NCBI RefSeq assembly: GCF_020745735.1
Contig: NC_083409.1
Coordinates: forward strand, 19,550,341-19,614,340
DNA: 64,000 nt
From: Hemiscyllium ocellatum
Lineage: Eukaryota
Direction of reading: 5' to 3'
A model generated the notes under the pieces. It ran no database searches. It was not told the DNA's origin and was given only the letters and a program-made list of their open reading frames with translations. Of this stretch, positions 3,701 to 61,015 are shown piece after piece. The position numbers and the translations under genes are program-made. Positions within the stretch are counted from its first letter, which is position 1, and the number at the start of each line of letters is the position of its first letter.

Positions 3701-3817
3701 CTGAAAAACCAGAGGAGAAAGCAAACATTAATTCCAGTCCGACATTATTTTCCAAGTTTATGAAAAAGGAAGAAGGTGGGATAAGCCAGGAGATTGATTG
3801 CCAGCCTACCTCTGGGT

Positions 3818-4005
3818 GTCATGGTGGCTCAGTGGTTAGCACTGCTACCTCTGAGCACTATGTATTTGGGTTCACATTCCTCTCTTGAGCAATTCTGTGT
3901 GTGTGGAGTGAGTACATTTTCCTTGTGTCTGCATGGGTTTCCTCGAGGTTTCCTCTAGCTCCAGTTTCCTCCCACAGTCCAAAGATGTGCAGTTAGATGG
4001 ATTAG
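3818..4005 (+). mobile_element. Degraded HE1/V-SINE
   Basis: tRNA-like head ggtggctcagtggttagcactgct and V-domain gtttcctcccacagtccaaagatgtgc. Confidence 0.65.
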
Positions 4006-5071: not shown

Positions 5072-5399
5072 GTGGGCGGCACGGTGGCACAGTGGTTAGC
5101 ACTGCTGCCTCACAGCGCCTGAGACCCGGGTTCAATTCCCGACTCAGGCGACTGACTGTGTGGAGTTTGCACGTTCTCCCCGTGTCTGCGTGGGTTTCCT
5201 CCGGGTGCTCCGGTTTCCTCCCACAGTCCAAAGATGTGCGGGTCAGGTGAATTGGCCATGCTAAATTGCCCGTAGTGTTAGGTAAGGGGTAAATGTTGGG
5301 GAATGAGTGGGTTGCGCTTCGGCGGGTTGGTGTGGACTAGTTGGGCTGAAGGGCCTGCTTCCACACTGTAAGTAATCTAATCTAATCTAAGTAATCTAA
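5072..5399 (+). mobile_element. Full-length HE1-type V-SINE with (TAATC)n tail
   Basis: A/B boxes in the tRNA-derived head, V-domain and CR1-like tail. Nearly identical to copies at 31281 and 55683. Confidence 0.9.
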
Positions 5400-12504: not shown

Positions 12505-15304
12505 TTTTTTTATTTCAAAAATATACTTTATTCATAAAATAATTTGATGGTCTGTACAGTTGGTCATGCCATACATATGTAAACATTTACATAGAGATCA
12601 GAATTTATCACTTTTATATACAGGTCTGTACATTTTTCAATCATATGCCCATATATTTAGCTGAGGCATCAGCAGAGCCCAAATGACTGCATGGACCCCC
12701 CTGTTCTTCTTTAGGCAGGCAGATGTTACACGGTGGTCTTTCCCCACCGCGTCTTGGCGGCAGTTTCCCCAAGCTTCAGCGCATCCCTCAACACATAGTC
12801 CTGGACCATGGAATGTGCCAGTCTGCAACACTCAGTCAGGGGCAACTCCTTCAGCTGGATAATCAACAGGTTTCGGACCGCCCAGAGAGCGTTCTTCACC
12901 GAGTTGATGATCCTCCAGGCACAGTTGATGTTCGTCTCGGTGTGCGTCCCGGGGAACAGGCTGTAGAGCACGGAGTCCCACGTCACGGCCCTGCTTGGGA
13001 CGAACTTCGACAAACATCACTGCATTCCTCTCCAGACTTCCTCTGCATAGGCACATTCCAGAAGGAGGTGCGTGACAGTCTCTTCCCCCCCGCAACCGCT
13101 TCGAGGGCAGCGTGTGGTGCGGCTGAGAGTCCGTGTGTGCTTAAAGGATCTCACAGGCAGAGCCCTTCTCACCACCAGCCAAGCCATGTCTTGGTGCTTG
13201 TTGGAAAGTTCTGGCGATGAGGCATTCTGCCAAATGGCTTTGACAGTCTGCTTAGGGAACTGCTCGATAAGATCCGCCCTCTCCTTTTCCCGAAGGGTCT
13301 CAAGGACACTACGTGCTGACCACTTCCTGATGGACTTGTGGTCAAAGGTGTTTTTTTTTTCGTAAACTTCTCCACGAAGGACAGGTGATACGGAATGGTC
13401 CATCTACTCAGAGCGTTCCACGGCAGCGAGGCCAGGCCCATCCTTCGCAACACCAGGGACAGGTAGAACCTCAGTACGTAGTGACACTTGGTGTTTGCGT
13501 ACTGGGGATCCAGGCACAGTTTGATGCAGCCACACACAAAGGTGGCCATCAGGGTGAGGGTGGCATGGAGTGTATTTTTTCCCCCGTTGCCCAGATCTTT
13601 GTACAGCGAGTCCCTTCGGACCGGGTCCATCTTTGATCTCCATATAAACTGGAAGATGGCCCGGGTGACTGCAGCGGCACAGGTTCTGGGAATAGGCCAG
13701 ACCTGTGCCACGTATAACAGCAATGACAGTGCCTGATGACCAGATTTTTTCCCCTGATGGAGAGCGACCGTAGCTTCCATCTGCCCAGTTTCTGCCTCAC
13801 TTTGCTGATACGCTCCTCCCAAGACTTGGCGCATGCCCCCGCCCTCCCCGAACCAAATACTCAGCACCTTCAGGTGGTCGGTCCTGACGGTGAATGGGAT
13901 CGAGGATTGGTCGGCCAGTTCCCGAAGAGCATGGCCTCGCTCTTGCCTCGGTTTACCCTGGCCTCCGAGGCCCATTCGAACTGGTCACAAATGCACATGA
14001 GTCTGCGCACGGACAGCGGATCCGAGCAGAAAACGGCGACGTCATCCACGTACAGGGAGGCCTTAACCTGCATGCCCCCGCTGCCAGGAATAGTCACCCC
14101 TCTCAGGCTCGCATCCTTCCTGATGGACTCGGCAAATGGCTCTATGCAGCACACAAACAAGGCAGGAGAGAGAGAGAGAGGGCAGCCCTGCCTGACTCCA
14201 GATCTGACTGGGAAGCTATTTGATTCCCACCCATTGATTGAGACTGCACTGACAATGTTGGTGTAGAGCATTCTGTTCCAATTGCAGCTTCCCTCCCCAA
14301 AGCCCATTTTGGAGAGAACATCTCTCATATACCTGTGTGATATCCTGTCATAGGTTTTCTCCTGGTCCAGGCTGGTCAGGCAAGTTTCCAACCCTCTGTC
14401 CTGCTCGTAGGAGATCGTATCCCTGAGGAGTCCAAGACTGTCAGCAATCTTCCTGCCCAGCACAGCACTGGTTTGGTCAGGGTGAATCATTGACCCCAGA
14501 ACAGACCTGACCCAGTTGGCGATTACCTTTGACAGAATCTTGTAATCCGCATTCAACAGAGAGATTGGTCTCCAATTTTTGAGTTCCTCCCTCTCCCCCT
14601 TCCGCTTGTAGATGAGGGTGATGATGCCTTTCCTCATGGATTCACTATGGTACCTGCCCGAAGCATACTGACATACACCTCCAGCAGGTCCTGGCCAATC
14701 AAATCCCACAGAGCAGAATAGAGCTCGACCGGTAAGCCGTCACTTCAGGGAGTTTTATTCTTTTCGAAGGACTCGAGGGTCTTGGTCAGCTCATCCAGAG
14801 ATAGCGGCTGGTCCAGGCTCTCGCGTGTTCTGTCGTCTAAGACCTCCGTGATAGAGGACAGGAACGACTGGGAGGCCGCGCTGTCAGTCGGCTTCGAGTC
14901 ATACAGACTGGCATAGAAGAATTTACTGATTCTCATGACCTCAGTCTGAGATGACGTTACCGAGCCATCTTCTTCCTTCAGGCTGCTGAGCACAGAGCTC
15001 TCTTCTTGCACCTTCTGGAAGAAGAAACGTAAGCCCGTCTCGTCCTGCTCCACCGAGCGGACCCTGGACTGGGAGATTATCTTGGAGGCCTCCGAGGCGA
15101 AGATCGAGGCTTGCTGGCCCTTCACCTCCTTGAGGTCCTCCGTGACATCGAACCCCATCGTCTGCAGCAGGAGCACATTCTGCATACTTTCCTGGAGTTG
15201 GGACAGTTTTCCCCGCCTCTGTCTCGCCTCCTGAACACCTTTGAGGATGAAAAACCTCTTGATGTTCTCTTTTACTGTTTCCCACCAGTCCGTTGGGGAC
15301 TCAA
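12504..15304 (-). mobile_element. 5'-truncated Tx1/L1-clade LINE (copy 1): ORF2 RT and C-terminal CCHC, 3' UTR, poly(A)
   Basis: NWRPISLLNADYKILSK, GVRQGCPLS, YVDDV and CPRSGCGGEETVTHLLLEC in broken frames. T-run at 12504-12511. Confidence 0.92.
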
Positions 15305-15403
15305 AGAAACACCATATTCAGCAAACACACTGCCTTTGAAAGCAGTCAAACAGATTTCATATATTTACCTCTGCTCAGAGCCACTCTTTCTCATCCTCTC
15401 TAT
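15305..15403. repeat. Right copy of the direct repeat flanking Tx1 copy 1
   Basis: Begins exactly at the LINE 5' truncation point with a 3-nt (AGA) microhomology. Confidence 0.85.
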
Positions 15404-25364: not shown

Positions 25365-26935
25365 TTTTTAAAAATTTCAAAATATACATTATTCATAGAA
25401 ATAAATCTTTGTTACCTGTACAATTTGTCATGTCGTTCATAGATATATACATTGCACGTCTTAACATTACAAAGAACAGATTGAATTAATCGAATTTACA
25501 GTTATCCTATTTACAGTTCCCTTTATTAACCATCCAGCCTCTTATTATTTAGATGTGGTTTCAGCGGAACCCACCTAGTGAGTGGGTGCCCTGTTATACG
25601 ATAACAAATGAACCTTCTTTTATCCCCAGTTTATGGGGTTACCATTGTCCATTTGACTGTCCTGTCTCTGGGATAGCTGTCTGCATCCCCATGGTGAGCA
25701 GGAACTGCTGGATCTTCACTGGGCTGAGGTAGCTATCCAGCTCCTCACTGGGGTCATTTACCCGCTCTGGTGTCATTGAGCCAAGGCAAGGGTCCTCACC
25801 ATCCAGTTCTGTGTCTGACAATGGGATTGTCAGAGGATCACAGCTTTCAGTTACCTGGAGTTGTGGGGCAGTGGGTACCCCCTGGTTCTCACTAGGTGGA
25901 GGGTGGACTTCGGGGTTCCGTTGTTTCCTGGTTGGGAGGAAATGCCCTCCTCTTTATCTACGGCGCTTTGTCTCTTCTTCTGGTGGTGATGACCTTCTTT
26001 GCGCTTGTCTTCCCCATCCGAAGAGCTAGCCATCTCTCCCTCGTGCAGTTACCTTTTCCCCCTTTGCTGAGAGGCTTTGGGGGCCTGGCAGGATTTTCTC
26101 TTCCTGTTTTTAACAGGTATCCGCTCCTCTGCCTTCTCGATTACCTCCTCCTCCATTGCTTCCATCGGCCCAGCTCGAGCTAGGATCAGCTGCTGTGTCT
26201 CTCCACTGGCTGCTGCCTCCTCCACTCCAAGCCTGTTCTTCTTTCTGGGTGCCACCAGTCTCCGTTTCCCTGCTGTCTGGGTGGACCTTGCTGGTCTTTG
26301 GGGATCCACAGCTCACATTGCCACTTCCAGCCATCTGTGCGTAAGTGGGCCCCCTCCCGTCTTGGGCAGGTCTTGTACATGTGGCCTGCCTCTCCGCACA
26401 GGTTGCAGCTCTTTGCTTCCTGACAGTCCTTAGTCAGGTGAGCGTCCTGTTTGCAATTCCTGCAGATGGTCACCTTACAATCCGCCACCATGTACCCCGC
26501 CTTCCCACAGGATCGGCACACTTTCGGCTGCCCTGCATATGTCAGGTAGCCTCTGCTCCCTCCAATTGTGAAGCTCGAGGGTGGGTGGAGAATTTCCCCA
26601 TTACCATCGACCCTCAGAGTTACCCTGACCTGCCGCTTACTAGTCCAGATCCCAAAGGGGTCAATCACATCGGTGGCTTCTCCCTCATCTTGGATCTACC
26701 TTCCCAGGAAGGTCAGGACATCAGCCGCTGGAACATAGGGGTTGTACATATGGATTGTAACAACCCGACTCCTCTGTGCAGGAAGCACACACAATGGGAT
26801 CGCCGACAAGATGGAGAATAGTGGCTCCCCCTCCTTCTCCTTGAAGACCTTCAGGAGCTGCTCACACTGCTTCACACTTCTGAAGGTCACGTCAAAGTAG
26901 CCTGCACCAGGAAAATCCTGCAGGCAGTACACATC
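25365..26935 (-). mobile_element. ORF1-only (HAL1-like) Tx1/L1 derivative, 5'-truncated
   Basis: ORF1 has an RRM-like region and three zinc knuckles (CRSCGKAGYMVADC, CRNCKQDAHLTKDC, CNLCGEAGHMYKTC), broken by stops and frameshifts. It is followed directly by a 3' UTR homologous to that of copies 1 and 2, with no ORF2. Confidence 0.75.
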
Positions 26936-27166: not shown

Positions 27167-30100
27167 TTAAACGGTGGTCTTTCCCCACCGCGCCTTGGCG
27201 GCAGCTGCCCCAAGCTTCAGCGCGTCCCTCAACACATAGTCCTGGACCTTGGAATGTGCCAGTCTGCAATACTCAGTCGGGGTCAATTCCTTCAGCTGGA
27301 AGATCAACAGGTTTCGGACCAACCAGAGAGCATCCTTCACCGAGTTGATGATCCTCCAGGCGCAGTTGATGTTCGTCTCGGTGTGCGTCCTGGGGAACAG
27401 GCCGTAGAGCACGGAGTCCCTCGTCACGGCGCTGCTCAGGACGAACCTCGACAAATACCACTGCATTCCTCTCTGGACTTCCTCTGCATAGGCACATTCC
27501 AGAAGGAGGTGTGTGACAGTCTCGTCCCCCCCACAGCCGCTTCGAGGGCAGCGTGCGATGTGGCAGAGAGTCCGGGCGTGCATAAATGATCTCACAGGTA
27601 GAGCCCTTCTCACCATCAGCCAAGCCATGTCTTGGTGCTTGTTGGAAAGTTCTGGCGATGAGGCATTCTGCCAAATGGCTTTGACAGTCTGCTCAGGGAA
27701 CCACTCAACAGGATCTGCCCTCTCCTTTTCCCGAAGGATCTCAAGGACGCTACGTGTTGACCACTTCCTGATGGACTTGTGGTCAAAGGTGTTTTTCTTC
27801 AAAACTTTCTCCACGAAGGACAGGTGGTATGGAACGGTCCAACTACTCGGAGCATTCCGCGGCAGCGAGGCCAGGCCCATCCTTCGCAACACAGGGGACA
27901 GGTAGAACCTCAGTATGTAGTGACACTTGGTGTTTGCGTACTGGGCATCCACGCACAGCTTGATACAGCCACACACAAAGGTGGCCATCAGGGTGAGGGT
28001 GGCATTGGGAGTGTTTTTTCCCCCATTGCACCGGTCTTTGTACATAGTGTCTCTTCGGACCCGGTCCATCTTTGATCTCCACATGAAGTGGAAGATGGCC
28101 CAGGTGACTGTGGCAGCACAGGTTCTGGGGATAGGCCAGACCTGTGCCACATATAACAATACTGAGAGTACCTCACACCTGATGATCAGGTTTATTCCCG
28201 CGATGGAGAGCGACCATTGCTCCCATCTGCCTAGTTTCTGTCTCATCTTCCTGATCCACTCATCCCAGGTCTTGGCGCACGCCCCAGCCCCCCCGAACAA
28301 ATACCCAGCACCTTCAGGCGGTCAGTCCTGATGGTCAGTCCAGTTCTGATTGGTCAGTCCAATTCCCGAAGAGCATGGCCTCGCTCTTGCCTCGGTTTAC
28401 CTTGGCCCCCGAGGCCCGTTCGAACTGGTCACAGATGCACAGGAGTCTGTGCACGGACAGCGGATCCGAGCAGAAAACGGCGCCGTCATCCATGTACAGG
28501 GAGGCCTTAACCTGTAGGCCCCCGCTGCCAGGAATAGTCACCCCTCTCAGGCTCGCATCCTTCCTGATGGATTTGGCAAATGGTTCTATGCAACACACAA
28601 ACAAGGCAGGAGAGAGAGGGCAGCCCTGCCTGACTCCAGATCTAACTGGGAAGCTATTTGATTCCCACCCATTGATTGAGACTGCACTGACAATGTTGGT
28701 GTAGAGCAGTCTGATCCAATTTCCGATTCCCTCCCAAAGCCCATTTTGGAGAGGACATCCGTCATATATGTACGCGATATCCGGTCAAAAGCTTTCTCCT
28801 GGTCCAGGCTGATGAGGCAGGTGTCCACCCCCCTGTCCTGCACGTAGGCGATCATATCCCTGAGGAGTGCAAGACTCTCAAAGATCTTCCTGCCCAGTAC
28901 AGCACAGGTTTGGTCAGTGTGGATCACCGCTCCCAGAACAGACCTGACCTGGTTGGTGATGACCTTTGACAAGATTTTGTAGTCTGTGTTTAACAGTGAG
29001 ATCGGTCTCCAATCTCTAATTTCGTCCCTCTCCCCCTTCTGCTTGTAGATGAGGGTGATGATGCCTTTCCTCATGGATTCACTCATGGTACCTGCCCGAA
29101 GCATACCGACATACACCTCCAGCAGGTGCCGGCCAATCAAGTCCCAAAGAGCGGAATAGATCTCGACCGGTAAGCCGTCGCTTCCGGGAGTTTTATTCTT
29201 TTCGAAGGACTCGAGGGCCCTGGTCAGCTCATCCAGAGATAGCGGCTGGTCCAGCCTCTCTCGTGTTCCGTCATCTAGGACCTCTGTGATAGAGGACAGG
29301 AACGACTGGGAGGCCGCGCTGTCGGTCGGCTTCGCGTCATACAGACTGGCATAGAAGGATTTGCTGATCCTCATGACGTCAGCCTGTGATGACGTTACCG
29401 AACCATCTTCTTCCTTCAGGCTGCTGAGCACGGAGCTGTCTTTGTGCACCTTCTGGAAGAAGAAACGTGAGCACGTCTCATCCTGCTCTACCGAGCGGAC
29501 CCTGGACCGGAAGATTATCTTGGAAGCCTCCGAGGCAAAGAGCGAGGCTTGCTGGCCCTTCACCTCCTTGAGGTCCTCCGTGACATCGACCCCCAACGTC
29601 TGCAGCAGGAGCAGGTTCTGCATACTTTTCTGGAGTTGGGACAGTTTTCCCCACCTCTGTCTCGCCTCCTGAACACCTTTGAGGATGAAGAACCTCTTGA
29701 TGTTCCCTTTTACTGTTTCCCACCAGTCTGCTGGAGACTCAAAGAGGGGCTTCGCGGTTCTCCAACCTGCGTAGTCCCTCTTCAGCTCCTCAATGTTTCC
29801 CAGGGTCAACAGCTTTGTGTTCAGCTTCCACGTTCCCTTGCCCGCCCGCTGCTCGTCCTGTAGGTGACAGTCGGCCAGCAGGGGGCAGTGGTCAGAGAAG
29901 AACACCGGCTTGACGTCGGTGATTCTGACCGAGAACGTTCGGGACACAAACAGGTAATCTATCCTTGAGCGGATAGACCCGTCTGCCCATGACCAGGTGT
30001 ATCTACGCTGCGCTCCATCTGCAGGGGTGCTGAAGACGTCGTGCAGCTTTTCATCTTTTACCGTGTCCATCAGGGCTCTGGACGTGGCGTCCAGTTTACT

Positions 30101-30572: not shown

Positions 30573-31149
30573 TTTAACAGTTTACAGGTTTACCAGTGTC
30601 CATTTGCTGCTGGTCTTGCCCCTCTGGGGTAGCTGCGTGCATCCCCGTGGTGGCGGCAAACTGTTGGACCTTCCCAGGGCTGAGGTGGCTGTCCAGCTCC
30701 GCGCTGGGGCCATTACCGCACTCTGTTGTCTTCGTGTCGGGCCCATGGTCCGCACTGACCAGTTCTCCGTCTGACAGCGGGGCTGTCATAGGACCGCTCC
30801 TCCCAGTTACCTGGAGCTGTGGGCCGGTGGGCACCTCCTGGTTCTCACCGGGTAGGGGGAGGCTTTTACCCATCCCCTCGAAGGGATCGTCCTTTCCTTC
30901 TTGGGCGGTGCTGCCCTCCTTTCTCCCCATGGTGCTCTGTCTCTTCCTCTGATGACGACCCTTCTTGCACCCGTCCTCACCATCGGAAGAGCTGCCTGCG
31001 TCTTCGACTTGTAGGTGTCGCTTCCCCCTTCGCTGGGTGGCTTTGGGGCCCCCGAGAGGTTTTCTCTTCCTGTTTTTGACTGTGATCCAGTCCTCTGCCT
31101 CCTTTGATTCCTCCTCTTCCATCACGTCAGGCTCACTGAAGTCATCTTG

Positions 31150-31269
31150 GTCAGGATGGCTGAGTGGTCTAAGGCGCCTGATTTAAGGAGTGTTAGTCCT
31201 TGCTCTGCATCTGGGCTTGTGAATTCTGGTCCCTTTCTAGGGGCGTGGGTTCAAATCCCACTCCTGACA
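31150..31269 (+). tRNA. Intron-containing tRNA-Leu (CAA-type body, anticodon now TAA), probably a pseudogene
   Basis: Exon 1 is 31150-31187, the 36-nt intron 31188-31223, exon 2 31224-31269. Perfect acceptor stem GTCAGGA/TCCTGAC, T-arm GTGGG-TTCAAAT-CCCAC and type-II variable arm. One T-T mismatch in the anticodon stem. Confidence 0.85.
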
Positions 31270-31280
31270 TGTCTCCCTTT

Positions 31281-31591
31281 GTGGGCGGCACGGTGGCACA
31301 GTGGTTAGCACTGCTGCCTCACAGCGCCGGAGACCCGGGTTCAATTCCCGACTCAGGCGACTGACTGTGTGGAGTTTGCACGTTCTCCCCGTGTCAGCGT
31401 GGGTTTCCTCCGGGTGCTCCGGTTTCCTCCCACAGTCCAAAGATGTGCGGGTTAGGTGAATTGACCATGCTAAATTGCCCGTAGTGTTAGGTAAGGGGTA
31501 AATGTAGGGGTATGGGTGGGTTGCGCTTCGGCGGGTCGGTGTGGACTTGTTGGGCCGAAGGGCCTGTTTCCACACTGTAAGTCTAATCTAA
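31281..31591 (+). mobile_element. Full-length HE1-type V-SINE fused to the tRNA trailer
   Basis: Near-identical to the SINE at 5072; tail taagtctaatctaa. Confidence 0.9.
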
Positions 31592-32469
31592 TTTCCTCCA
31601 TCTGCCTTGAAGGAGCTTGGATCGGCTGCTGCACCTCCCCGCTGTCTGCCGTCTACTCCGCTAACGCCTGCCCTTCCTTCTGGGTGCCTCCGTTTCTGGT
31701 GCCTTGCTGGTCTTTGTCGATCCACGGCTCGTATTAGTGTTGCCACCTCCGGCCATCTGTGCGTAGTTGGTGGCTCCTCGTCTTGGGCAGGCCTTATACA
31801 TGTGGCCCGCCTCCCCGCACAGGTTACAATTCTTAGCCTCCTTACAATCCTTGGTCGGGTGGCCTTCCTGTTTGCAGTTTTGGCATACGGTCACCTTACA
31901 GTCGGCCGCCATGTGGCCTGACCTCCCGCAGGTTCGGCACACCTTCGGCTGCCCTGCATACGTCAGGTAACCTCTGTTTCCTCCGATGGCAAAGCTGGAG
32001 GGTGAGTGGAGGATGTTCCCGCTGGCATCGACTCTCAGGGTTACCTTGACCTGTCTTTTGCTGGCCCAGATCCCAAAAGGATCAACCACATCAATGCTTT
32101 CTCCTTCATTGAGGGGCAATGCAGAATGGACAGGGATAGGGGATCTAGGTTACAAGGAAATACCAGAACAGGATCTCGAGGGGGGAGGGAGGGTATTCTG
32201 ATAACAAAACTTCATTATGAAATTGACACAGTAAATGTAAATTTACTGTCAATACTGACAAACAGAAAGGCAAAATGACACATTCACCAAGTACAGGAAG
32301 GATATCAGGAAAATATTTTGATGCAGAGATTGGAACTTAGTGAGTGCTGGTAAACTGGGTCCTCCATTCAAAATGGGACAGAATTACTTCTTGGAATTTG
32401 AACTGGTCTGAAGCAAAAGAGCAAATTAGGATCAAATAGTCATTTGAGAATATTGAACTGGCCTGAAAA

Positions 32470-32700
32470 ATGCCCGGTGTTTGGCAGCTTTTCATTTTGC
32501 TTTCATCAGGATAATTGTAAAAGTACCAATCAAAGGAGAAAAACATGACATTGATATTGCATATGAGGAAAGTGCTGACACCCTGAGGTGTTGTCACTAT
32601 GAACACGCCAGTTTAAATATTGTTTCCCTTTGCTGTGACATTTCTTGTAAATTGTCCTGATGCATGCAAGACAAAAAGCTTCAACAAAATGTTTTGTTTT
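32470..32700. mobile_element. Decayed palindromic Penelope-derived repeat with degenerate hammerhead cores
   Basis: ctgatgcatgcaagacaaaaagcttc at 32657-32682 and an inverted counterpart near 32480-32510. Confidence 0.45.
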
Positions 32701-33871
32701 TCGCAACATTCAAATTAGGATCAGTTTGGAGAGAAAGAATGAAGATGGAAATGTATTAAGTTAACAATGAAAATTGATCTAAATTCAGCAGAGACCAGGA
32801 TAGTTTCACCTTGAACTTAAAACAGGAATTACCAGGTGAAGTTTAATCACTGGACTGAGTTAACCACCTTCAACCAGTTTGATTGTTTGAATTGTCCATC
32901 AGTTATGTTGATTACTCCTGGGATGGGGAGGGCATTGACGTGTCTGCTATTTATTGTCCTTCCCTAACTATCCTGGAGAGGGCGATGGTTAGTCATGAGA
33001 TTCTTGAAGAGGATCTGACAGAGTGACAAGATCATAAGACATAGGAGTGGAAGTAAGGCCATTCAGCCCATCGAGTCCACTCCACTGGGCCTGAGTGCAA
33101 CTGTCCCTCAGGAGAATGAGCTGTGGCACAAGGGAAAACCTGAGAGTGGTGAAAAGGCTGCGCAGGGGCTGAACCAGGTTTGACGAATGAGCTGATGTCC
33201 TTCTGAGCTGAGTTGCAGACTCAGGCTTTCAGGGCCGCACAGCTTACACTGTTACTGACCATAGCTCCATGATTGATGAGACCTGCCCCAGGAGAACATC
33301 CACAGAAAGCTGCCTCCTGTGTGTCTGATGCGTCTGTGTGTCTCTCAGACGTGACTGAGCAGGCAGCAAGAGATCCCCCTCCCCCACTTTCACCGATCAA
33401 CTTACAAACTCCTTCCGGGGAAAGCATTCAGCACCAGCCATCGCCTGCTTCAATGTGTCCTACACCCCACCTCAAGACAACAGACCCCACTGCCCCTGCC
33501 CCTAACATCTGCTCTCCATCTCTCTCCTGAAGGCACTATCTCTGGCTGGGAAACATCTCGAGCCTCCCCAGGTGGTCTCATTCCTCCAAGTGTGGGCTGG
33601 GATGGTTAAACAAGGCAGGCTGTTGGACTGGGAGGTGTCAGCCTGGTCTCAGTGGGGAGCAGTCTCCCCTCACTCACAATGTTGCAGACTGGGTGGATGA
33701 GCCATTGGGAAATGCAGGGTTACAGGGATAGTGCAGTGGTTTGGATCTGGGTGGGATGCTCTTCGGAGGATTGGTGTGAACACATTGGGGTGAATGGCCT
33801 GCTTCAACGTTGTACAGATTCCATCATTACATGATTCTATCACTGAAGCAAATTATCCAGGCTGAGAATGC

Positions 33872-36885: not shown

Positions 36886-38454
36886 GTGGGGAGGGATCAG
36901 GCAGAGAGGAAGAGTCATTGCAGCCATTGTGCAGCATCCACTGTCAAGTTGTCCCATTTCCAATCCCACTGCAATGTCATTGTCTGCCCTGAGACCAAGC
37001 AAATGCTCCCATCACAAGAGGCTCCATGGCCCGGAGGACTGTGAGAGTGAGCCCTCTCCATTCAGCTCGATCATCAAGCTCCAGCCTTCCTCATATGGTG
37101 GCAGCCAGGAGAACCCTGCCCATGGGAGATTCCACACACACTCCCTCCCTCCCTGCAGGGAAAGATGATTCCATGACCCTGCTTTCTCTCGAAAATGATC
37201 CAAATTCAAGTGTTGCTGAAAAAAAGAAACAGTTTGTCAAAGCTTTTGTCTTGCACACAACAAGACAATTTGTAAGAAATAGCACAGCAAAACTCTGGAG
37301 ACCCCAATGGGTCAGGCAGCATCCATGGAGTGAAAGCAAGGCAAAATAAAATGCTTTCATTTGTCTCACTCAAGTACTATATTCTCAAATGACTATTTGA
37401 TCCTGATTTCCTCTTTTCCTTCAGGCTATTGAAATTCTAAAAAGTATTCCTGTCTTTTTATGAATAGAGCACTCTGTTTATGATTATTCATCATTCAATT
37501 CCAATAACTGCATCAAAATGTTTTTCCTGATCTCTTTTCAGTACCTGGTATATGACTGGAGAATATGTCATTTTGCCTTTCAGTTTGTCTGCACTGATAG
37601 TCAATCTACATTTACTGTGTTTATTTGTTTAAGAATTTTTGAACATCAGAATACCCTCCCTCCACTGTTGACATCCTGTCTGGCCTTCACAGAATCACAG
37701 AATTGAGGAATTCCTACGGAGTGGAAGCAGGCCACACAGCCCAGCAAACTCATACCGACCCTTTGAAGGCCATCCCACCCAGACGCACACCTCCCCCACC
37801 CTATTCCTGTAATCCTGCATTTTCCATGGCATTTTTCATTTGCTAGCCTGCACATCTCTTGTGACCCTAGATCCCCTGTCCATGTCCCATTATGTATTGC
37901 CCCTCAAAGCAGCCCCTAACTGTGCACCATATTCTAGCCATGATCTAACCATTCTTCAGGACAGCATGAGAGAGCAGCTGATTAAAGCAGATTCCATATC
38001 AACATGAACATAGAATACAGCGTGGATGTGAAAAGCGTGTTTCCTTTTCGGGGAGAATATCAAATTAAAACAAGTTCCCTCACAGAAGACCGAGATAAGC
38101 AGGTTTTTTTTCTTGAATAAGGTCATAGATCTTTGGAACTCTTCATCAAACATAGAAATGAAACCTCTGAATGCCTGTAGTGAAGTAGTAGATAGCCATT
38201 GCTTTCAAGAATCTATCAGAGTAAGGCAAGAATGTGGAATAATCAGGTCAGCCATTGGGAGCAGGCTCAAGAGGATAAATCTCCTTCCTCTGCCCCTAAC
38301 TCATTTGATCGTGTGTCCAGTTCCACCGTTGAAAGAACAGCGCCTTGAAAGTTTGTGGTTTTCAATAAAGCAGCTGAAGTGGCTACTGGTTTGTGTGGGC
38401 ACGAATGGAAGGGGACTTTACCCATAATCCTCAGCAGCCGTGCAAGCTCTCTCT

Positions 38455-44159: not shown

Positions 44160-44450
44160 AAGTTCAATTCCAGCCTCAGGCGACTGTCTGTGTGGAGTTT
44201 GCTCATTCTCCAAGTGCCTGCGTAGGTTTCCTCTGGGTGCTCTGGTTTCCTACCACAGTCTAAAGACGTGCAGGTTAGGTGAATTGGCCATGCTAAGTTA
44301 CCCATAGTGGTCAGGGATGTGTAGGTTAGGCTCATTAGTCAGGGGAAAAGCAGAGTAATAAGACAGGGGATTGGGTCTTGGGTAGGTTACTCTTCCAAGG
44401 TCAGTGTGGACATGTTGGGCCAAGTGGCCTGTTTCCTCACTGTAGGGATT
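44160..44450 (+). mobile_element. Partial, diverged HE1/V-SINE
   Basis: V-domain gtctgtgtggagtttgc...gtttcctaccacagtctaaagacgtgc. Confidence 0.7.
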
Positions 44451-55682: not shown

Positions 55683-56005
55683 TTAGATTAGATTAGATTA
55701 GACTTACAGTGTGGAAACTAGGCCCTTCGGCCCAACAAGTCCACACCGACCCGCCGAAGCGAAACCCACCCATACCCCTACATTACCCCTTACCTAACAC
55801 TACGGGCAATTTTAGCATGGCCAATTCACCTGACCCGCACATCTTTGGAATGTGGGAGGAAACCGGAGCACCCGGAGGAAACCCACGCAGACACGGGGAG
55901 AACGTGCAAACTCCACACAGTCAGTCGCCTGAGTCGGGAATTGAACCCGGGTCTTCAGGCGCTGTGAGGCAGCAGTGCTAACCACTGTGCCACCGTGCCG
56001 CCCAC
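55683..56005 (-). mobile_element. Full-length HE1-type V-SINE
   Basis: Reverse complement of the 5072 and 31281 SINEs, flanked by aattttagatta at 55679-55690 and 56007-56018. Confidence 0.9.
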
Positions 56006-56589
56006 CAATTTTAGATTATGTTAGCCATTGTCTAAGGAAAAGCCAGGGAACTATAAACCAGTGAGCCTGATGTCATTGCTGGGTAAGATATTGGAGTGAA
56101 TTCTGAGGGACAGGATTTACATGCATTTGGACAATCAATGCAGTTTTGTGCATGGTAATCGTGTCTCACTAACGTGATTGAGGTTGTTTGAAGAGAAGAT
56201 TGATGTCAGCAGAACAGTAGACACTGTCTATATGGACTTCAGCAAAGCATTTGACAAGGTTCCACATGATAGACTGATTAGTAAGATTAGGCCACATGGG
56301 ATCCAGGGGGAGCTAGCCATTTGGGTAAAAAAATGACTTCAAGATAGGAGACAGAGAGTGGTGGTAAGGGGTTGCTTTTCAGACTGGAGATCAGATGTCA
56401 GCTGTGTGCCACAAGGATTGGTGCTGGTTCCACGGCTTTTCATCATTTAAATACATGATTTGGATGTGAATATAAGAATTATAGCGAGTTTGTAAATGAC
56501 CCCAAAATTGGTGGTACAGTGGATAGTGAAGAAGCATATCTGAGAGTACAGTGGGACCTTGATCATTTGGGGAAATGGGCAGAGGTGTG

Positions 56590-60269: not shown

Positions 60270-61015
60270 AGGCCATTTGGCCCATTGTGTCTGTGCTGGT
60301 AAACAAAGATCTGATGACACTAATCCCATCCTCCAGCTCTTGGCCCGTTACCCTGGGAGCTACAGCAACACAAGGGAATATCTAAACACTGCTCCAATGT
60401 CACGAGAGTTTCTGACTCAACCAGCCTTTCAGGCAGTGAGTTCCAGACTCCCACCACCCTCTGGGTGAAAACATTTCTTCTCAACTCTCCTCTCACTCTC
60501 CAACTCGCCTGGCCATGGACTCACTCGTGTTCAGAACGATGAGAGGGGATCTGATTGAAACATATAAAATTGTAACAGGGCTGGGCAGGGAGGAGGTTTC
60601 CCCTGGTTGGGGAGTCTGGAACCAGGGGACACAGGCTCAGGGGGATATAGGGTAGACCATTTCGGACTGAGATGAGGAAACATTTCTTCACTCAGAGAGT
60701 GGTCAACCTGTGGAATTCGCTACCACTGAAGGCTGTGGAGGACAAGGAACTGAATATATTCAAGAAAAAGAGAGATAATTGTTTTGCATTTTAACAGCTT
60801 GAAGAGAATGGGGAGAAGGCAGGAATATGGCTTTGAGAGAGAGGATCAGCCATAGATCATAGAATGCCTACAGTGTGGAAACAGGCCATTTGGCCCGACA
60901 AGTCCACACTGACCCTCGAAGAAATGATGACATTCAAAAATTGATACAGCCATGATCATACTGAATGACAGAGCAGACTCAAAGGGCCAAATGGCCTACT
61001 GCTGCTCCAAGTTTC
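60270..61015. mobile_element. CR1 3' fragments in both orientations
   Basis: GDLIETYKI-like motif and typical CR1 tails. Confidence 0.65.

What the first reader, a model, noticed from the sequence alone, without database searches (positions are those of the whole stretch)
31123..31592. Unprocessed pre-tRNA-Leu fused to a full-length SINE, inserted as one 470-bp block into Tx1 ORF1
Seen: removing 31123-31592 restores ORF1 (…ttccat/ttcctccat…, collinear with the half-L1 copy) with only a 2-nt AT overlap. The block consists of a 27-nt 5' flank, tRNA exon 1, a retained 36-nt intron, exon 2 without CCA, an 11-nt trailer TGTCTCCCTTT ending in a Pol III-like T-run, and then the SINE from its first base to its tail. 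Established: U6/L1-type chimeric retrocopies form by template switching or RNA ligation, and composite SINEs can arise by Pol III read-through. Inference: a pre-tRNA/SINE chimeric retrocopy, or a member of a nascent dimeric tRNA-Leu+HE1 SINE family. The 27-nt leader is long for a pre-tRNA, so two successive insertions remain possible.
Basis: partly seen in the sequence, partly recalled or inferred. Interest (0 to 1): 0.8.

Follow-up and report, generated by a model that had tools for sequence, protein, structure and literature searches.

The report
Pre-tRNA-Leu plus SINE chimeric retrocopy
A 470-base block made of an unspliced, untrimmed leucine tRNA transcript joined head-to-tail to a complete shark SINE was pasted in one step into an old LINE gene; it is a clean but single example of a known copying accident that also shows how new SINEs can be born.

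Summary
At 31150-31269 (+) lies a class II tRNA-Leu: a 38-nt exon 1, a 36-nt intron at the canonical 37/38 site, a 46-nt exon 2 and no CCA. A 27-nt leader precedes it and the trailer TGTCTCCCTTT follows. A full-length V-SINE of HE1 type (31281-31592) abuts the trailer directly; two other copies in the window fix its first base and its (TCTAA)n tail. Removing the block leaves the flanks collinear, codon for codon, with a second L1/Tx1-like ORF1 copy, and no target duplication exceeds 2 nt. ORF1 is still not intact, because a separate frameshift sits near 31660.

Best reading: one target-primed reverse transcription by a CR1-like partner LINE, started on the SINE tail. It then continued onto a primary pre-tRNA-Leu transcript, most likely by end-to-end template jump. 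Retroposition of a tRNA-gene-to-SINE read-through transcript is nearly as good.

The source gene and other copies could not be reached with these tools, so the mechanism stays open. Unverified notes from this scan report similar Pol III-transcript/HE1 or CR1 chimeras on other pieces of the same genome. This is a new member of a known kind, of moderate interest.

The parts
31123..31149 (+). 27-nt leader upstream of the tRNA, of unknown origin
   Evidence: No significant match inside the block or the window. It weakly resembles the SINE 3' end, CACTG(T)AAGTC(T)A(A)TCT, at about 1% of shuffles in a post hoc test.
31150..31187 (+). tRNA-Leu exon 1 (38 nt): A box TGGCTGAGTGG at 31157-31167, anticodon TAA at 31184-31186
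   Evidence: Rfam tRNA, 44.6 bits; cloverleaf of the spliced form.
31188..31223 (+). Retained 36-nt tRNA intron at the canonical 37/38 position. Its CTTG is the exact complement of CAAG, pointing to a CAA-type ancestor.
   Evidence: the CTTG/CAAG point is read directly from the sequence.
31224..31269 (+). tRNA-Leu exon 2 (46 nt): long variable arm, B box GGTTCAAATCC at 31248-31258, ends at the discriminator A, no CCA
31270..31280 (+). 11-nt 3' trailer TGTCTCCCTTT. With the next bases it reads TTTGT, a weak T3VT-type Pol III stop.
   Evidence: Sequence; no TTTT anywhere in the block; terminator strengths from PMC3141230.
31281..31592 (+). Full-length tRNA-headed V-SINE of HE1 type with a short (TCTAA)2T tail; the last AT may belong to the target
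   Evidence: Two full copies in the window at 95.5-96.8% identity with the same start and tail. The focal copy differs from the three-copy majority at 4 sites.
31366..31443 (+). Highly conserved central (V-type) domain of the SINE
   Evidence: The minus-strand ORF over this stretch is 25/26 identical to an ORF of the teleost Aldrovandia affinis and 29/37 identical to one of the bichir.
30577..31122 (-). Host L1/Tx1-like ORF1, the C-terminal part downstream of the insertion in the ORF sense
   Evidence: 183-codon ORF; collinear with the 25627-26156 copy.
31593..32149 (-). Host ORF1, upstream part with the ZCCHC3-type RNA-binding domain and CCHC knuckles; a separate frameshift lies near 31655-31663
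   Evidence: Pfam; frames; collinear with 26161-26688.
25627..26688 (-). Second ORF1 copy, used as a stand-in for the empty site
   Evidence: 72-75% identity to both flanks, contiguous across the insertion point.
5074..5386 (+). Reference SINE copy with a target duplication of about 12 bp (AAGACAGACATTG / AAGAAAACATTG)
   Evidence: plus reading by eye.
55692..56003 (-). Reference SINE copy with an 11-bp target duplication, AATCTAAAATT

Best explanation
A single target-primed reverse transcription event made the whole 470-bp block. A CR1-like LINE (the HER1-type partner of HE1/V-SINEs) nicked the decaying L1/Tx1-like element and primed on the (TCTAA)n tail of a SINE RNA, using the terminal AU/AT as a 2-nt overlap. 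It copied the SINE to its first base. It then jumped end-to-end onto the 3' U-tract of a nascent, unprocessed tRNA-Leu (CAA-type) primary transcript that still carried its leader, intron and trailer, and copied that as well. The cDNA was joined to a blunt or nearly blunt second break, which explains the missing target duplication.

Shown: the anatomy, the exact abutment, the full-length SINE, the retroposition-type 3' edge, and the absence of any duplication over 2 nt.

Inferred: the template jump itself, the identity of the reverse transcriptase, and the origin of the extra roughly 15-20 nt of leader (filler or a third template).

My confidence that the block arrived in one event is about 0.8. 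The figure in the confidence field is for the template-jump mechanism specifically.
For: - The tRNA unit has every mark of a primary Pol III transcript and none of a mature tRNA: leader, intron at 37/38, no CCA, and a trailer ending in TTT at +9 to +11.
- The SINE begins at the same base as independent copies. A jump at the end of the donor template fits this.
- The block ends exactly at the SINE tail, as expected if priming started there.
- The SINE 3' domain is shared with elements in the window that end in CR1-type ATTCTRTG repeats. HE1's partner LINE is given as HER1 (PMC3747384).
- Template switching by a CR1 reverse transcriptase from a SINE RNA to a tRNA has been proposed for PittSINE (PMC5729268). 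Small-RNA-derived 5' extensions occur on SINEU-2 (PMC4494074).
- Leads only, not checked here: notes from this scan report pre-tRNA-Leu, tRNA-Pro, vault RNA and 5S RNA fused to HE1 or CR1 elsewhere in this genome.
Against: - The 27-nt leader is about twice as long as a usual pre-tRNA leader (my own knowledge). It matches nothing that would explain the excess.
- TTT is not a terminator on its own (PMC3141230). TT also precedes the other two SINE copies as part of their target duplications, so the Ts may reflect an insertion-site habit.
- No target duplication flanks the chimera, whereas U6/L1-type chimeras and the two neighbouring SINE copies have one.
- No source gene and no second copy could be examined.
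Confidence: 0.42

Rival explanations
1. Retrocopy of a co-transcript (SINE 5' transduction). At a source locus a SINE sits 11 nt downstream of a tRNA-Leu gene, in or in place of its terminator. Either Pol III starting at the tRNA promoter reads through the crippled stop, or a longer Pol II transcript crosses both. The CR1-like machinery recognises the SINE tail and reverse transcription runs on past the SINE 5' end, stopping 160 nt upstream.
For: - The 27-nt leader is simply genomic 5' flank if the template was a longer transcript.
- The block has no TTTT on the + strand, and the junction TTTGT is only a weak T3VT signal, so Pol III could traverse it.
- All three young SINE copies are preceded by TT, so a SINE landing after CCCTTT fits the insertion habit.
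- A scan note (unchecked) describes a pre-tRNA-Leu joined to HE1 through a 254-nt trailer, which a jump onto a terminated transcript would not give.
- 5' transduction is one of the two mechanisms offered for SINEU-2 extensions.
Against: - It needs a SINE inserted within about 11 nt of a tRNA gene end.
- If the template was a canonical Pol III start, the leader is again too long.
- The distance equals a normal terminator position. That is automatic under a template jump but a coincidence under a random Pol II co-transcript.
- No source locus has been seen.
Confidence: 0.3
2. The block is one copy of a low-copy, self-propagating dimeric SINE family: a tRNA-Leu pre-tRNA head including the intron, plus HE1. 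It would be transcribed from the tRNA-Leu A and B boxes through the weak TTTGT stop. This overlaps with both readings above, which would then describe the family's founding event.
For: - A box TGGCTGAGTGG and B box GGTTCAAATCC are intact, and no T4 run occurs in the 470 nt.
- Two first-reader notes on other pieces of the genome describe pre-tRNA-Leu + V-SINE/HE1 units of 450 and 658 letters; these are unchecked.
Against: - There is only one copy in this 64-kb window.
- The noted units differ in length and trailer (11 against 254 nt), which points to separate events.
- Follow-up reports on sister cases called them one-offs.
- A Pol III start at the tRNA promoter would give a short, constant leader, not 27 nt.
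Confidence: 0.15
3. Two successive insertions. A tRNA retropseudogene and a SINE landed independently at the same point of ORF1, in either order.
For: - The leader is odd for a single pre-tRNA.
- A TTT on both sides of the SINE (CCCTTT|SINE|TTTCC, if the tail is read as ending in TCTAA) could be a 3-nt duplication from a second insertion.
Against: - The second event would have to hit the edge of the first to within 0-3 nt.
- Neither part has its own duplication of normal length, while neighbouring SINE copies have 11-13 bp.
- The host is collinear with nothing added or lost.
- A tailless, unspliced tRNA unit needs its own unusual insertion route.
- If the scan's notes hold, the recurrence of such pairs argues against coincidence.
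Confidence: 0.08
4. DNA-level capture. A genomic fragment carrying a tRNA-Leu gene and its neighbouring SINE was inserted at a double-strand break by end joining.
For: There is no target duplication, and the leader looks like plain genomic flank.
Against: The 3' edge coincides exactly with the end of the SINE's tail. Priming on that tail explains this; a random DNA fragment does not.
Confidence: 0.03

Closest known systems
U6/L1-type chimeric retrocopies (Buzdin 2002; census in bioRxiv 10.1101/2025.02.02.635956)
   Same: A complete small Pol III RNA lies in sense orientation, fused directly to the 5' side of a LINE-mobilised sequence and inserted in one event. Template switching and RNA ligation are the proposed mechanisms.
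   Different: - Here the reverse transcriptase is CR1-type, not L1.
- The 3' partner is a full-length SINE rather than a 5'-truncated L1.
- The 5' partner is an unprocessed pre-tRNA with intron, leader and trailer.
- No target duplication is present.
- Human tRNA/L1 chimeras are mostly tRNA halves in antisense orientation.
PittSINE origin: CR1 reverse transcriptase switching from TguSINE1 RNA to a tRNA (Suh et al. 2017, PMC5729268)
   Same: A CR1-mobilised SINE RNA is the donor and a tRNA is the acceptor; the result is a new tRNA head on a CR1-type tail.
   Different: - In PittSINE the new head replaced the old one and the product amplified.
- Here the whole old SINE is kept, so the product is dimeric.
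- The tRNA is unspliced, and amplification is not shown.
SINEU-2 copies with U1 snRNA-derived 5' extensions (Kojima 2015, PMC4494074)
   Same: Full-length SINE copies carry an extra small-RNA-derived segment on the 5' side. This was attributed to template jump or 5' transduction, the same two alternatives as here.
   Different: There the extension is a Pol II snRNA, and 26 copies with similar extensions were found; here it is a Pol III pre-tRNA in a single observed copy.
Tailless tRNA retropseudogenes (Schmitz et al. 2004; PMC5322556)
   Same: They are tRNA-derived retrocopies without a tail of their own, made by LINE machinery.
   Different: [quoted passage not shown] This one is a whole primary transcript attached to a SINE that supplies the tail.
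[quoted passage not shown] 2011, PMC3141230)
   Same: Weak or absent T4 signals let Pol III run into the 3' flank. An isolated T3 is almost inactive and T3VT motifs are partial stops, as with TTTGT here.
   Different: That work concerns transcription only; no retroposition of the read-through products was described.

Membership tests
Eukaryotic tRNA-Leu gene of the intron-bearing CAA type | Class II cloverleaf with long variable arm and 7-bp acceptor stem | tested here: met
   Rfam 44.6 bits; ARAGORN cloverleaf of the spliced 84-mer.
Eukaryotic tRNA-Leu gene of the intron-bearing CAA type | Intron one base 3' of the anticodon (37/38) | tested here: met
   Removing 31188-31223 gives the canonical anticodon arm.
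Eukaryotic tRNA-Leu gene of the intron-bearing CAA type | Anticodon CAA and an intact anticodon stem, that is, a working gene | tested here: not met
   The anticodon reads TAA and the stem has a T.T mismatch. The intron's CTTG suggests an ancestral CAAG. This is most likely a pseudogene copy now.
Template-switch chimeric retrocopy (U6/L1 type) | A complete small RNA in sense orientation, fused without spacer to the 5' end of a LINE-mobilised 3' partner | tested here: met
   The pre-tRNA unit 31123-31280 abuts the SINE start at 31281, on the same strand.
Template-switch chimeric retrocopy (U6/L1 type) | The 5' partner starts at its transcription start site | tested here: inconclusive
   The 27-nt leader is longer than usual pre-tRNA leaders. 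The source gene is unavailable and the leader matches nothing.
Template-switch chimeric retrocopy (U6/L1 type) | One target site duplication flanking the whole chimera | tested here: not met
   Only a 2-nt AT overlap; the flanks are collinear with the second ORF1 copy with no duplicated bases. Duplications are not obligatory for CR1-type insertions ('if present', PMC5729268).
Dimeric / composite SINE family | Many dispersed copies sharing the same internal junction | not testable with these tools
   One copy in the window. The metagenome scan found 0 matches. The protein-database route found no ORF with the junction. The scan's notes are unchecked leads.
Dimeric / composite SINE family | Internal Pol III promoter and a terminator-free body | tested here: met
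   A and B boxes are present in both the tRNA-Leu unit and the SINE head; no TTTT in the 470 nt.
V-SINE superfamily, HE1 type | Strongly conserved central segment shared across vertebrate classes | tested here: met
   31366-31443 translates to 25/26 identity with a teleost ORF and 29/37 with a bichir ORF.
V-SINE superfamily, HE1 type | 3' region derived from a CR1-like partner LINE (HER1) | tested here: inconclusive
   The 3' domain is shared with window elements ending in CR1-type ATTCTRTG repeats. No HER1 sequence was available to compare; the partner name comes from PMC3747384.
SINE 5' transduction / Pol III read-through retrocopy | A source locus where the tRNA gene and SINE are contiguous with the same spacing | not testable with these tools
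   No access to the rest of the genome.
Tx1 clade of L1 (host element) | Phylogenetic placement of the reverse transcriptase and endonuclease in the Tx1 clade | not tested
   Only Pfam domains of an APE-type L1-like LINE were seen.

The most novel reading that the evidence does not exclude
In this shark, a CR1-type reverse transcriptase habitually jumps from finished SINE or CR1 templates onto nascent, U-tailed Pol III transcripts (pre-tRNA-Leu, tRNA-Pro, vault RNA, 5S). This would be a non-mammalian counterpart of U6/L1 chimeras. It fossilises primary transcripts, unspliced introns included, and at least the tRNA-Leu+HE1 product has begun to spread as a dimeric SINE whose head keeps a tRNA intron.
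Probability: 0.15. Interest if true: 0.65.

Novelty: new member of a known kind. Interest (0 to 1): 0.38.

Why it matters
SINE heads are thought to arise when a LINE reverse transcriptase joins a Pol III transcript to a LINE-recognised tail, but the founding events are almost never seen. This block is such a joint, preserved soon after it formed: the SINE part is about 1% from the local consensus.

It also shows that the captured RNA was a primary transcript, with leader, intron and trailer still attached. If the sister cases noted elsewhere in this genome hold up, the epaulette shark would offer a countable set of such events. That set could be used to work out which RNAs CR1-type enzymes capture and how.

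On its own, this copy has no evident function. It adds one more lesion to an already broken LINE.

Tried and rejected
- Default ARAGORN found no tRNA. Its intron mode mis-drew a 72-nt class I tRNA with a 48-nt intron. The class II solution with a 36-nt intron was accepted instead.
- I looked for the origin of the 27-nt leader in the block and in the whole window, on both strands. Nothing rose above the shuffles. The likeness to the SINE 3' end is about 1% post hoc with three 1-nt gaps, so I treat it as probably chance. The 9-nt inverted match to the tRNA 3' end (CCTGACGTG / CCTGACATG) is within chance.
- The apparent duplication TTCCTCC..TCC flanking the block is rejected. The same repeated Glu-codon pattern is present, uninterrupted, in the second ORF1 copy.
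- I searched for other copies of the junction in JGI metagenome contigs with a degenerate pattern and found 0 matches.
- I used the 112-aa minus-strand ORF that spans SINE, trailer and exon 2 as a handle in the protein database. It returned 52 distant V-SINE ORFs (best 68%, Stegostoma), none carrying the tRNA-derived C-terminus. A second search with the + strand junction ORFs was not run, because the first showed that this genome's ORFs are not in the collection.
- Template switching by the host Tx1's own reverse transcriptase is rejected. The block is antisense to Tx1, and the enzyme would have had to resume at the exact base it left.
- I considered comparing the ages of the tRNA and SINE parts but dropped it. 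No trusted shark tRNA-Leu reference was available, and two sure defects in 84 nt against 4 in 312 nt cannot separate the two ages.

Full report
**What is there**

Reading 30700-32100 and scanning the whole window against Rfam gives one RNA hit: a tRNA at 31150-31269 on the + strand (44.6 bits, gathering score 29).
- ARAGORN misses it in default mode and finds it once introns are allowed, though it draws the wrong class.
- Taking out 31188-31223 gives an 84-nt class II tRNA-Leu cloverleaf: a perfect acceptor stem, a long variable arm, anticodon TAA and one T.T mismatch in the anticodon stem.
- The intron carries CTTG, the exact complement of CAAG. The ancestor was therefore probably the intron-bearing CAA isoacceptor, and TAA is a later C-to-T change (inference).
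- The A box (31157-31167) and B box (31248-31258) are intact.
- A 27-nt leader (31123-31149) lies upstream. The 11-nt trailer TGTCTCCCTTT (31270-31280) lies downstream.

**The SINE**

From 31281 to 31592 runs a tRNA-headed SINE.
- Two other copies in the window, at about 5074-5386 (+) and 55692-56003 (-), are 95.5-96.8% identical. They start at the same G(G)TGGGCGG and end in the same GTAAG(TCTAA)n tail. The focal copy is therefore full length and differs from the three-copy majority at only four sites.
- Its central 78 nt (31366-31443) are almost unchanged in ORFs of a teleost and a bichir. This is the hallmark of the V-SINE superfamily, to which HE1 of sharks and rays belongs (PMC3747384).
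- Its 3' domain, with a GGCC..GGCC hairpin, recurs in other window elements that end in CR1-type ATTCTRTG repeats. This fits a CR1-like partner LINE.

**The host and the insertion site**

The flanks belong to an L1/Tx1-like LINE on the minus strand: endonuclease, RT, zf-RVT, and an ORF1 with a ZCCHC3-type RNA-binding domain and CCHC knuckles.
- A second ORF1 copy at 25627-26688, 72-75% identical, aligns to the left flank up to 26156 and to the right flank from 26161.
- With the block removed, the nucleotide and protein alignments are gap-free across the junction.
- The block was therefore inserted with neither gain nor loss of host bases. Only the AT at 31121-31122 and 31591-31592 is shared.
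- The TTCCTCC-like similarity of the two flanks is an internal Glu-codon repeat that the uninterrupted copy also has, so it is not a duplication.
- By contrast, the two other SINE copies have duplications of about 11-13 bp.
- Removal does not rebuild ORF1. The junction-spanning open stretch is 202 codons (31652 to 30577), and the RBD/CCHC part is in another frame, so a separate frameshift lies near 31660.

**One event or two**

Four observations point to a single retroposition primed on the SINE tail.
- The right edge of the block is the last base of the SINE tail.
- The tRNA unit touches the SINE's first base.
- Neither part has a duplication of its own.
- The host is exactly collinear when both parts are removed together.

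Two hits at the same base are possible but unlikely (about 0.08). Capture of a DNA fragment does not explain why the block ends at the tail (about 0.03). My confidence in a single event is about 0.8.

**Which single event**

Two mechanisms fit.

(a) End-to-end template jump. The reverse transcriptase finishes the SINE RNA and continues on the 3' U-tract of a nascent pre-tRNA-Leu.
- This explains why the tRNA segment looks like a primary transcript and ends at TTT in the normal terminator position.
- It also explains why the SINE is complete.
- A CR1 reverse transcriptase switching from a SINE to a tRNA has been proposed for PittSINE (PMC5729268). Small-RNA 5' extensions of SINEs are documented (PMC4494074).

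(b) Retroposition of a co-transcript from a locus where the SINE sits just behind a tRNA-Leu gene.
- The block has no TTTT.
- TTTGT is only a weak T3VT signal, and an isolated T3 is nearly inactive (PMC3141230).
- TT also precedes the other two SINE copies as part of their duplications, so the T-run is not specific to a terminator.

The 27-nt leader is too long for an ordinary Pol III start (my own knowledge) and matches nothing. It counts against a pure pre-tRNA acceptor and against canonical Pol III read-through alike. It is neutral for a longer, 5'-truncated template. I put (a) at about 0.42 and (b) at about 0.30. There is an overlapping 0.15 chance that the product belongs to a small replicating dimeric family.

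**Leads from the scan (not evidence)**

Notes on other pieces of the same genome describe several related units. One follow-up note calls the genome the epaulette shark.
- Two more pre-tRNA-Leu + V-SINE/HE1 units, one with a 254-nt trailer.
- A tRNA-Pro + HE1 unit.
- A vault RNA + HE1 chimera.
- A 5S - pre-tRNA-Leu - CR1 chimera. This and the vault RNA case were followed up and judged one-off template-switch products.

These notes moved me towards a recurrent template-jump process, but I could not inspect any of those sequences.

**What could not be done**

The rest of the genome is out of reach.
- A degenerate junction pattern found nothing in metagenome contigs.
- A protein-database search with the ORF that spans the junction returned only distant V-SINE ORFs without the tRNA-derived end.

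**Comparison and verdict**

This works like a U6/L1-type chimeric retrocopy, but it differs in four ways.
- The enzyme is CR1-type.
- The 3' partner is a whole SINE.
- The 5' partner is an unspliced, untrimmed pre-tRNA in sense orientation. Human tRNA/L1 chimeras are mostly antisense halves.
- There is no target duplication.

It is a new member of a known kind. It is a tidy snapshot of the step that creates SINE heads, of moderate interest by itself and of more interest if the sister loci prove to be a systematic phenomenon.

Noticed in passing
window 31652-31664 (-): The host ORF1 changes frame here, about 60-70 nt upstream (in the ORF sense) of the insertion. The LINE copy was or became defective independently of the block.
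   Followed up: partly
window 60869-60915 (-), 33748-33814 (+), 37715-37784 (-), 44373-44444 (+): Elements sharing the SINE's 3' hairpin domain (GGGCC..GGCCTGTTTCCAC.CTGTAG) but ending in CR1-type ATTCTRTG-like repeats instead of TCTAA. They are either the partner LINE's 3' ends or sister SINE subfamilies.
   Followed up: partly
window 55692-56043 (-): This SINE copy inserted into a target that already resembled its own tail: AATCTAAAATT is duplicated and continuous with the TCTAA repeats. That suggests tail-target annealing during priming.
   Followed up: no
window 14685-15307 vs 29123-29745: A 623-bp fragment 92% identical to the ORF2 3' part of the host LINE. This is a much closer relative than the ORF1-only copy at 25627-26688, but it does not reach the insertion site.
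   Followed up: no
window 3814-4003 (+): A divergent (73%) relative of the SINE head and core whose 5' end begins TGGGTGTCATGGTGG. It shows that the family's conserved start is at or just before TGGG.
   Followed up: partly
window 31134-31147 (+): Part of the leader, CACTGAAGTCATCT, resembles the SINE's last bases CACTGTAAGTCTAATCT: 14 of 17 columns with three 1-nt gaps, reached by about 1% of shuffles in a post hoc test. If real, it would be a stub of a third template or an old SINE tail upstream of the source gene.
   Followed up: partly
window 32163-32750 vs 37169-37907 (-): The region 5' of the host ORF1 matches an inverted stretch about 5 kb away at 75-86% identity. This is possibly another copy of the LINE's 5' region.
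   Followed up: no
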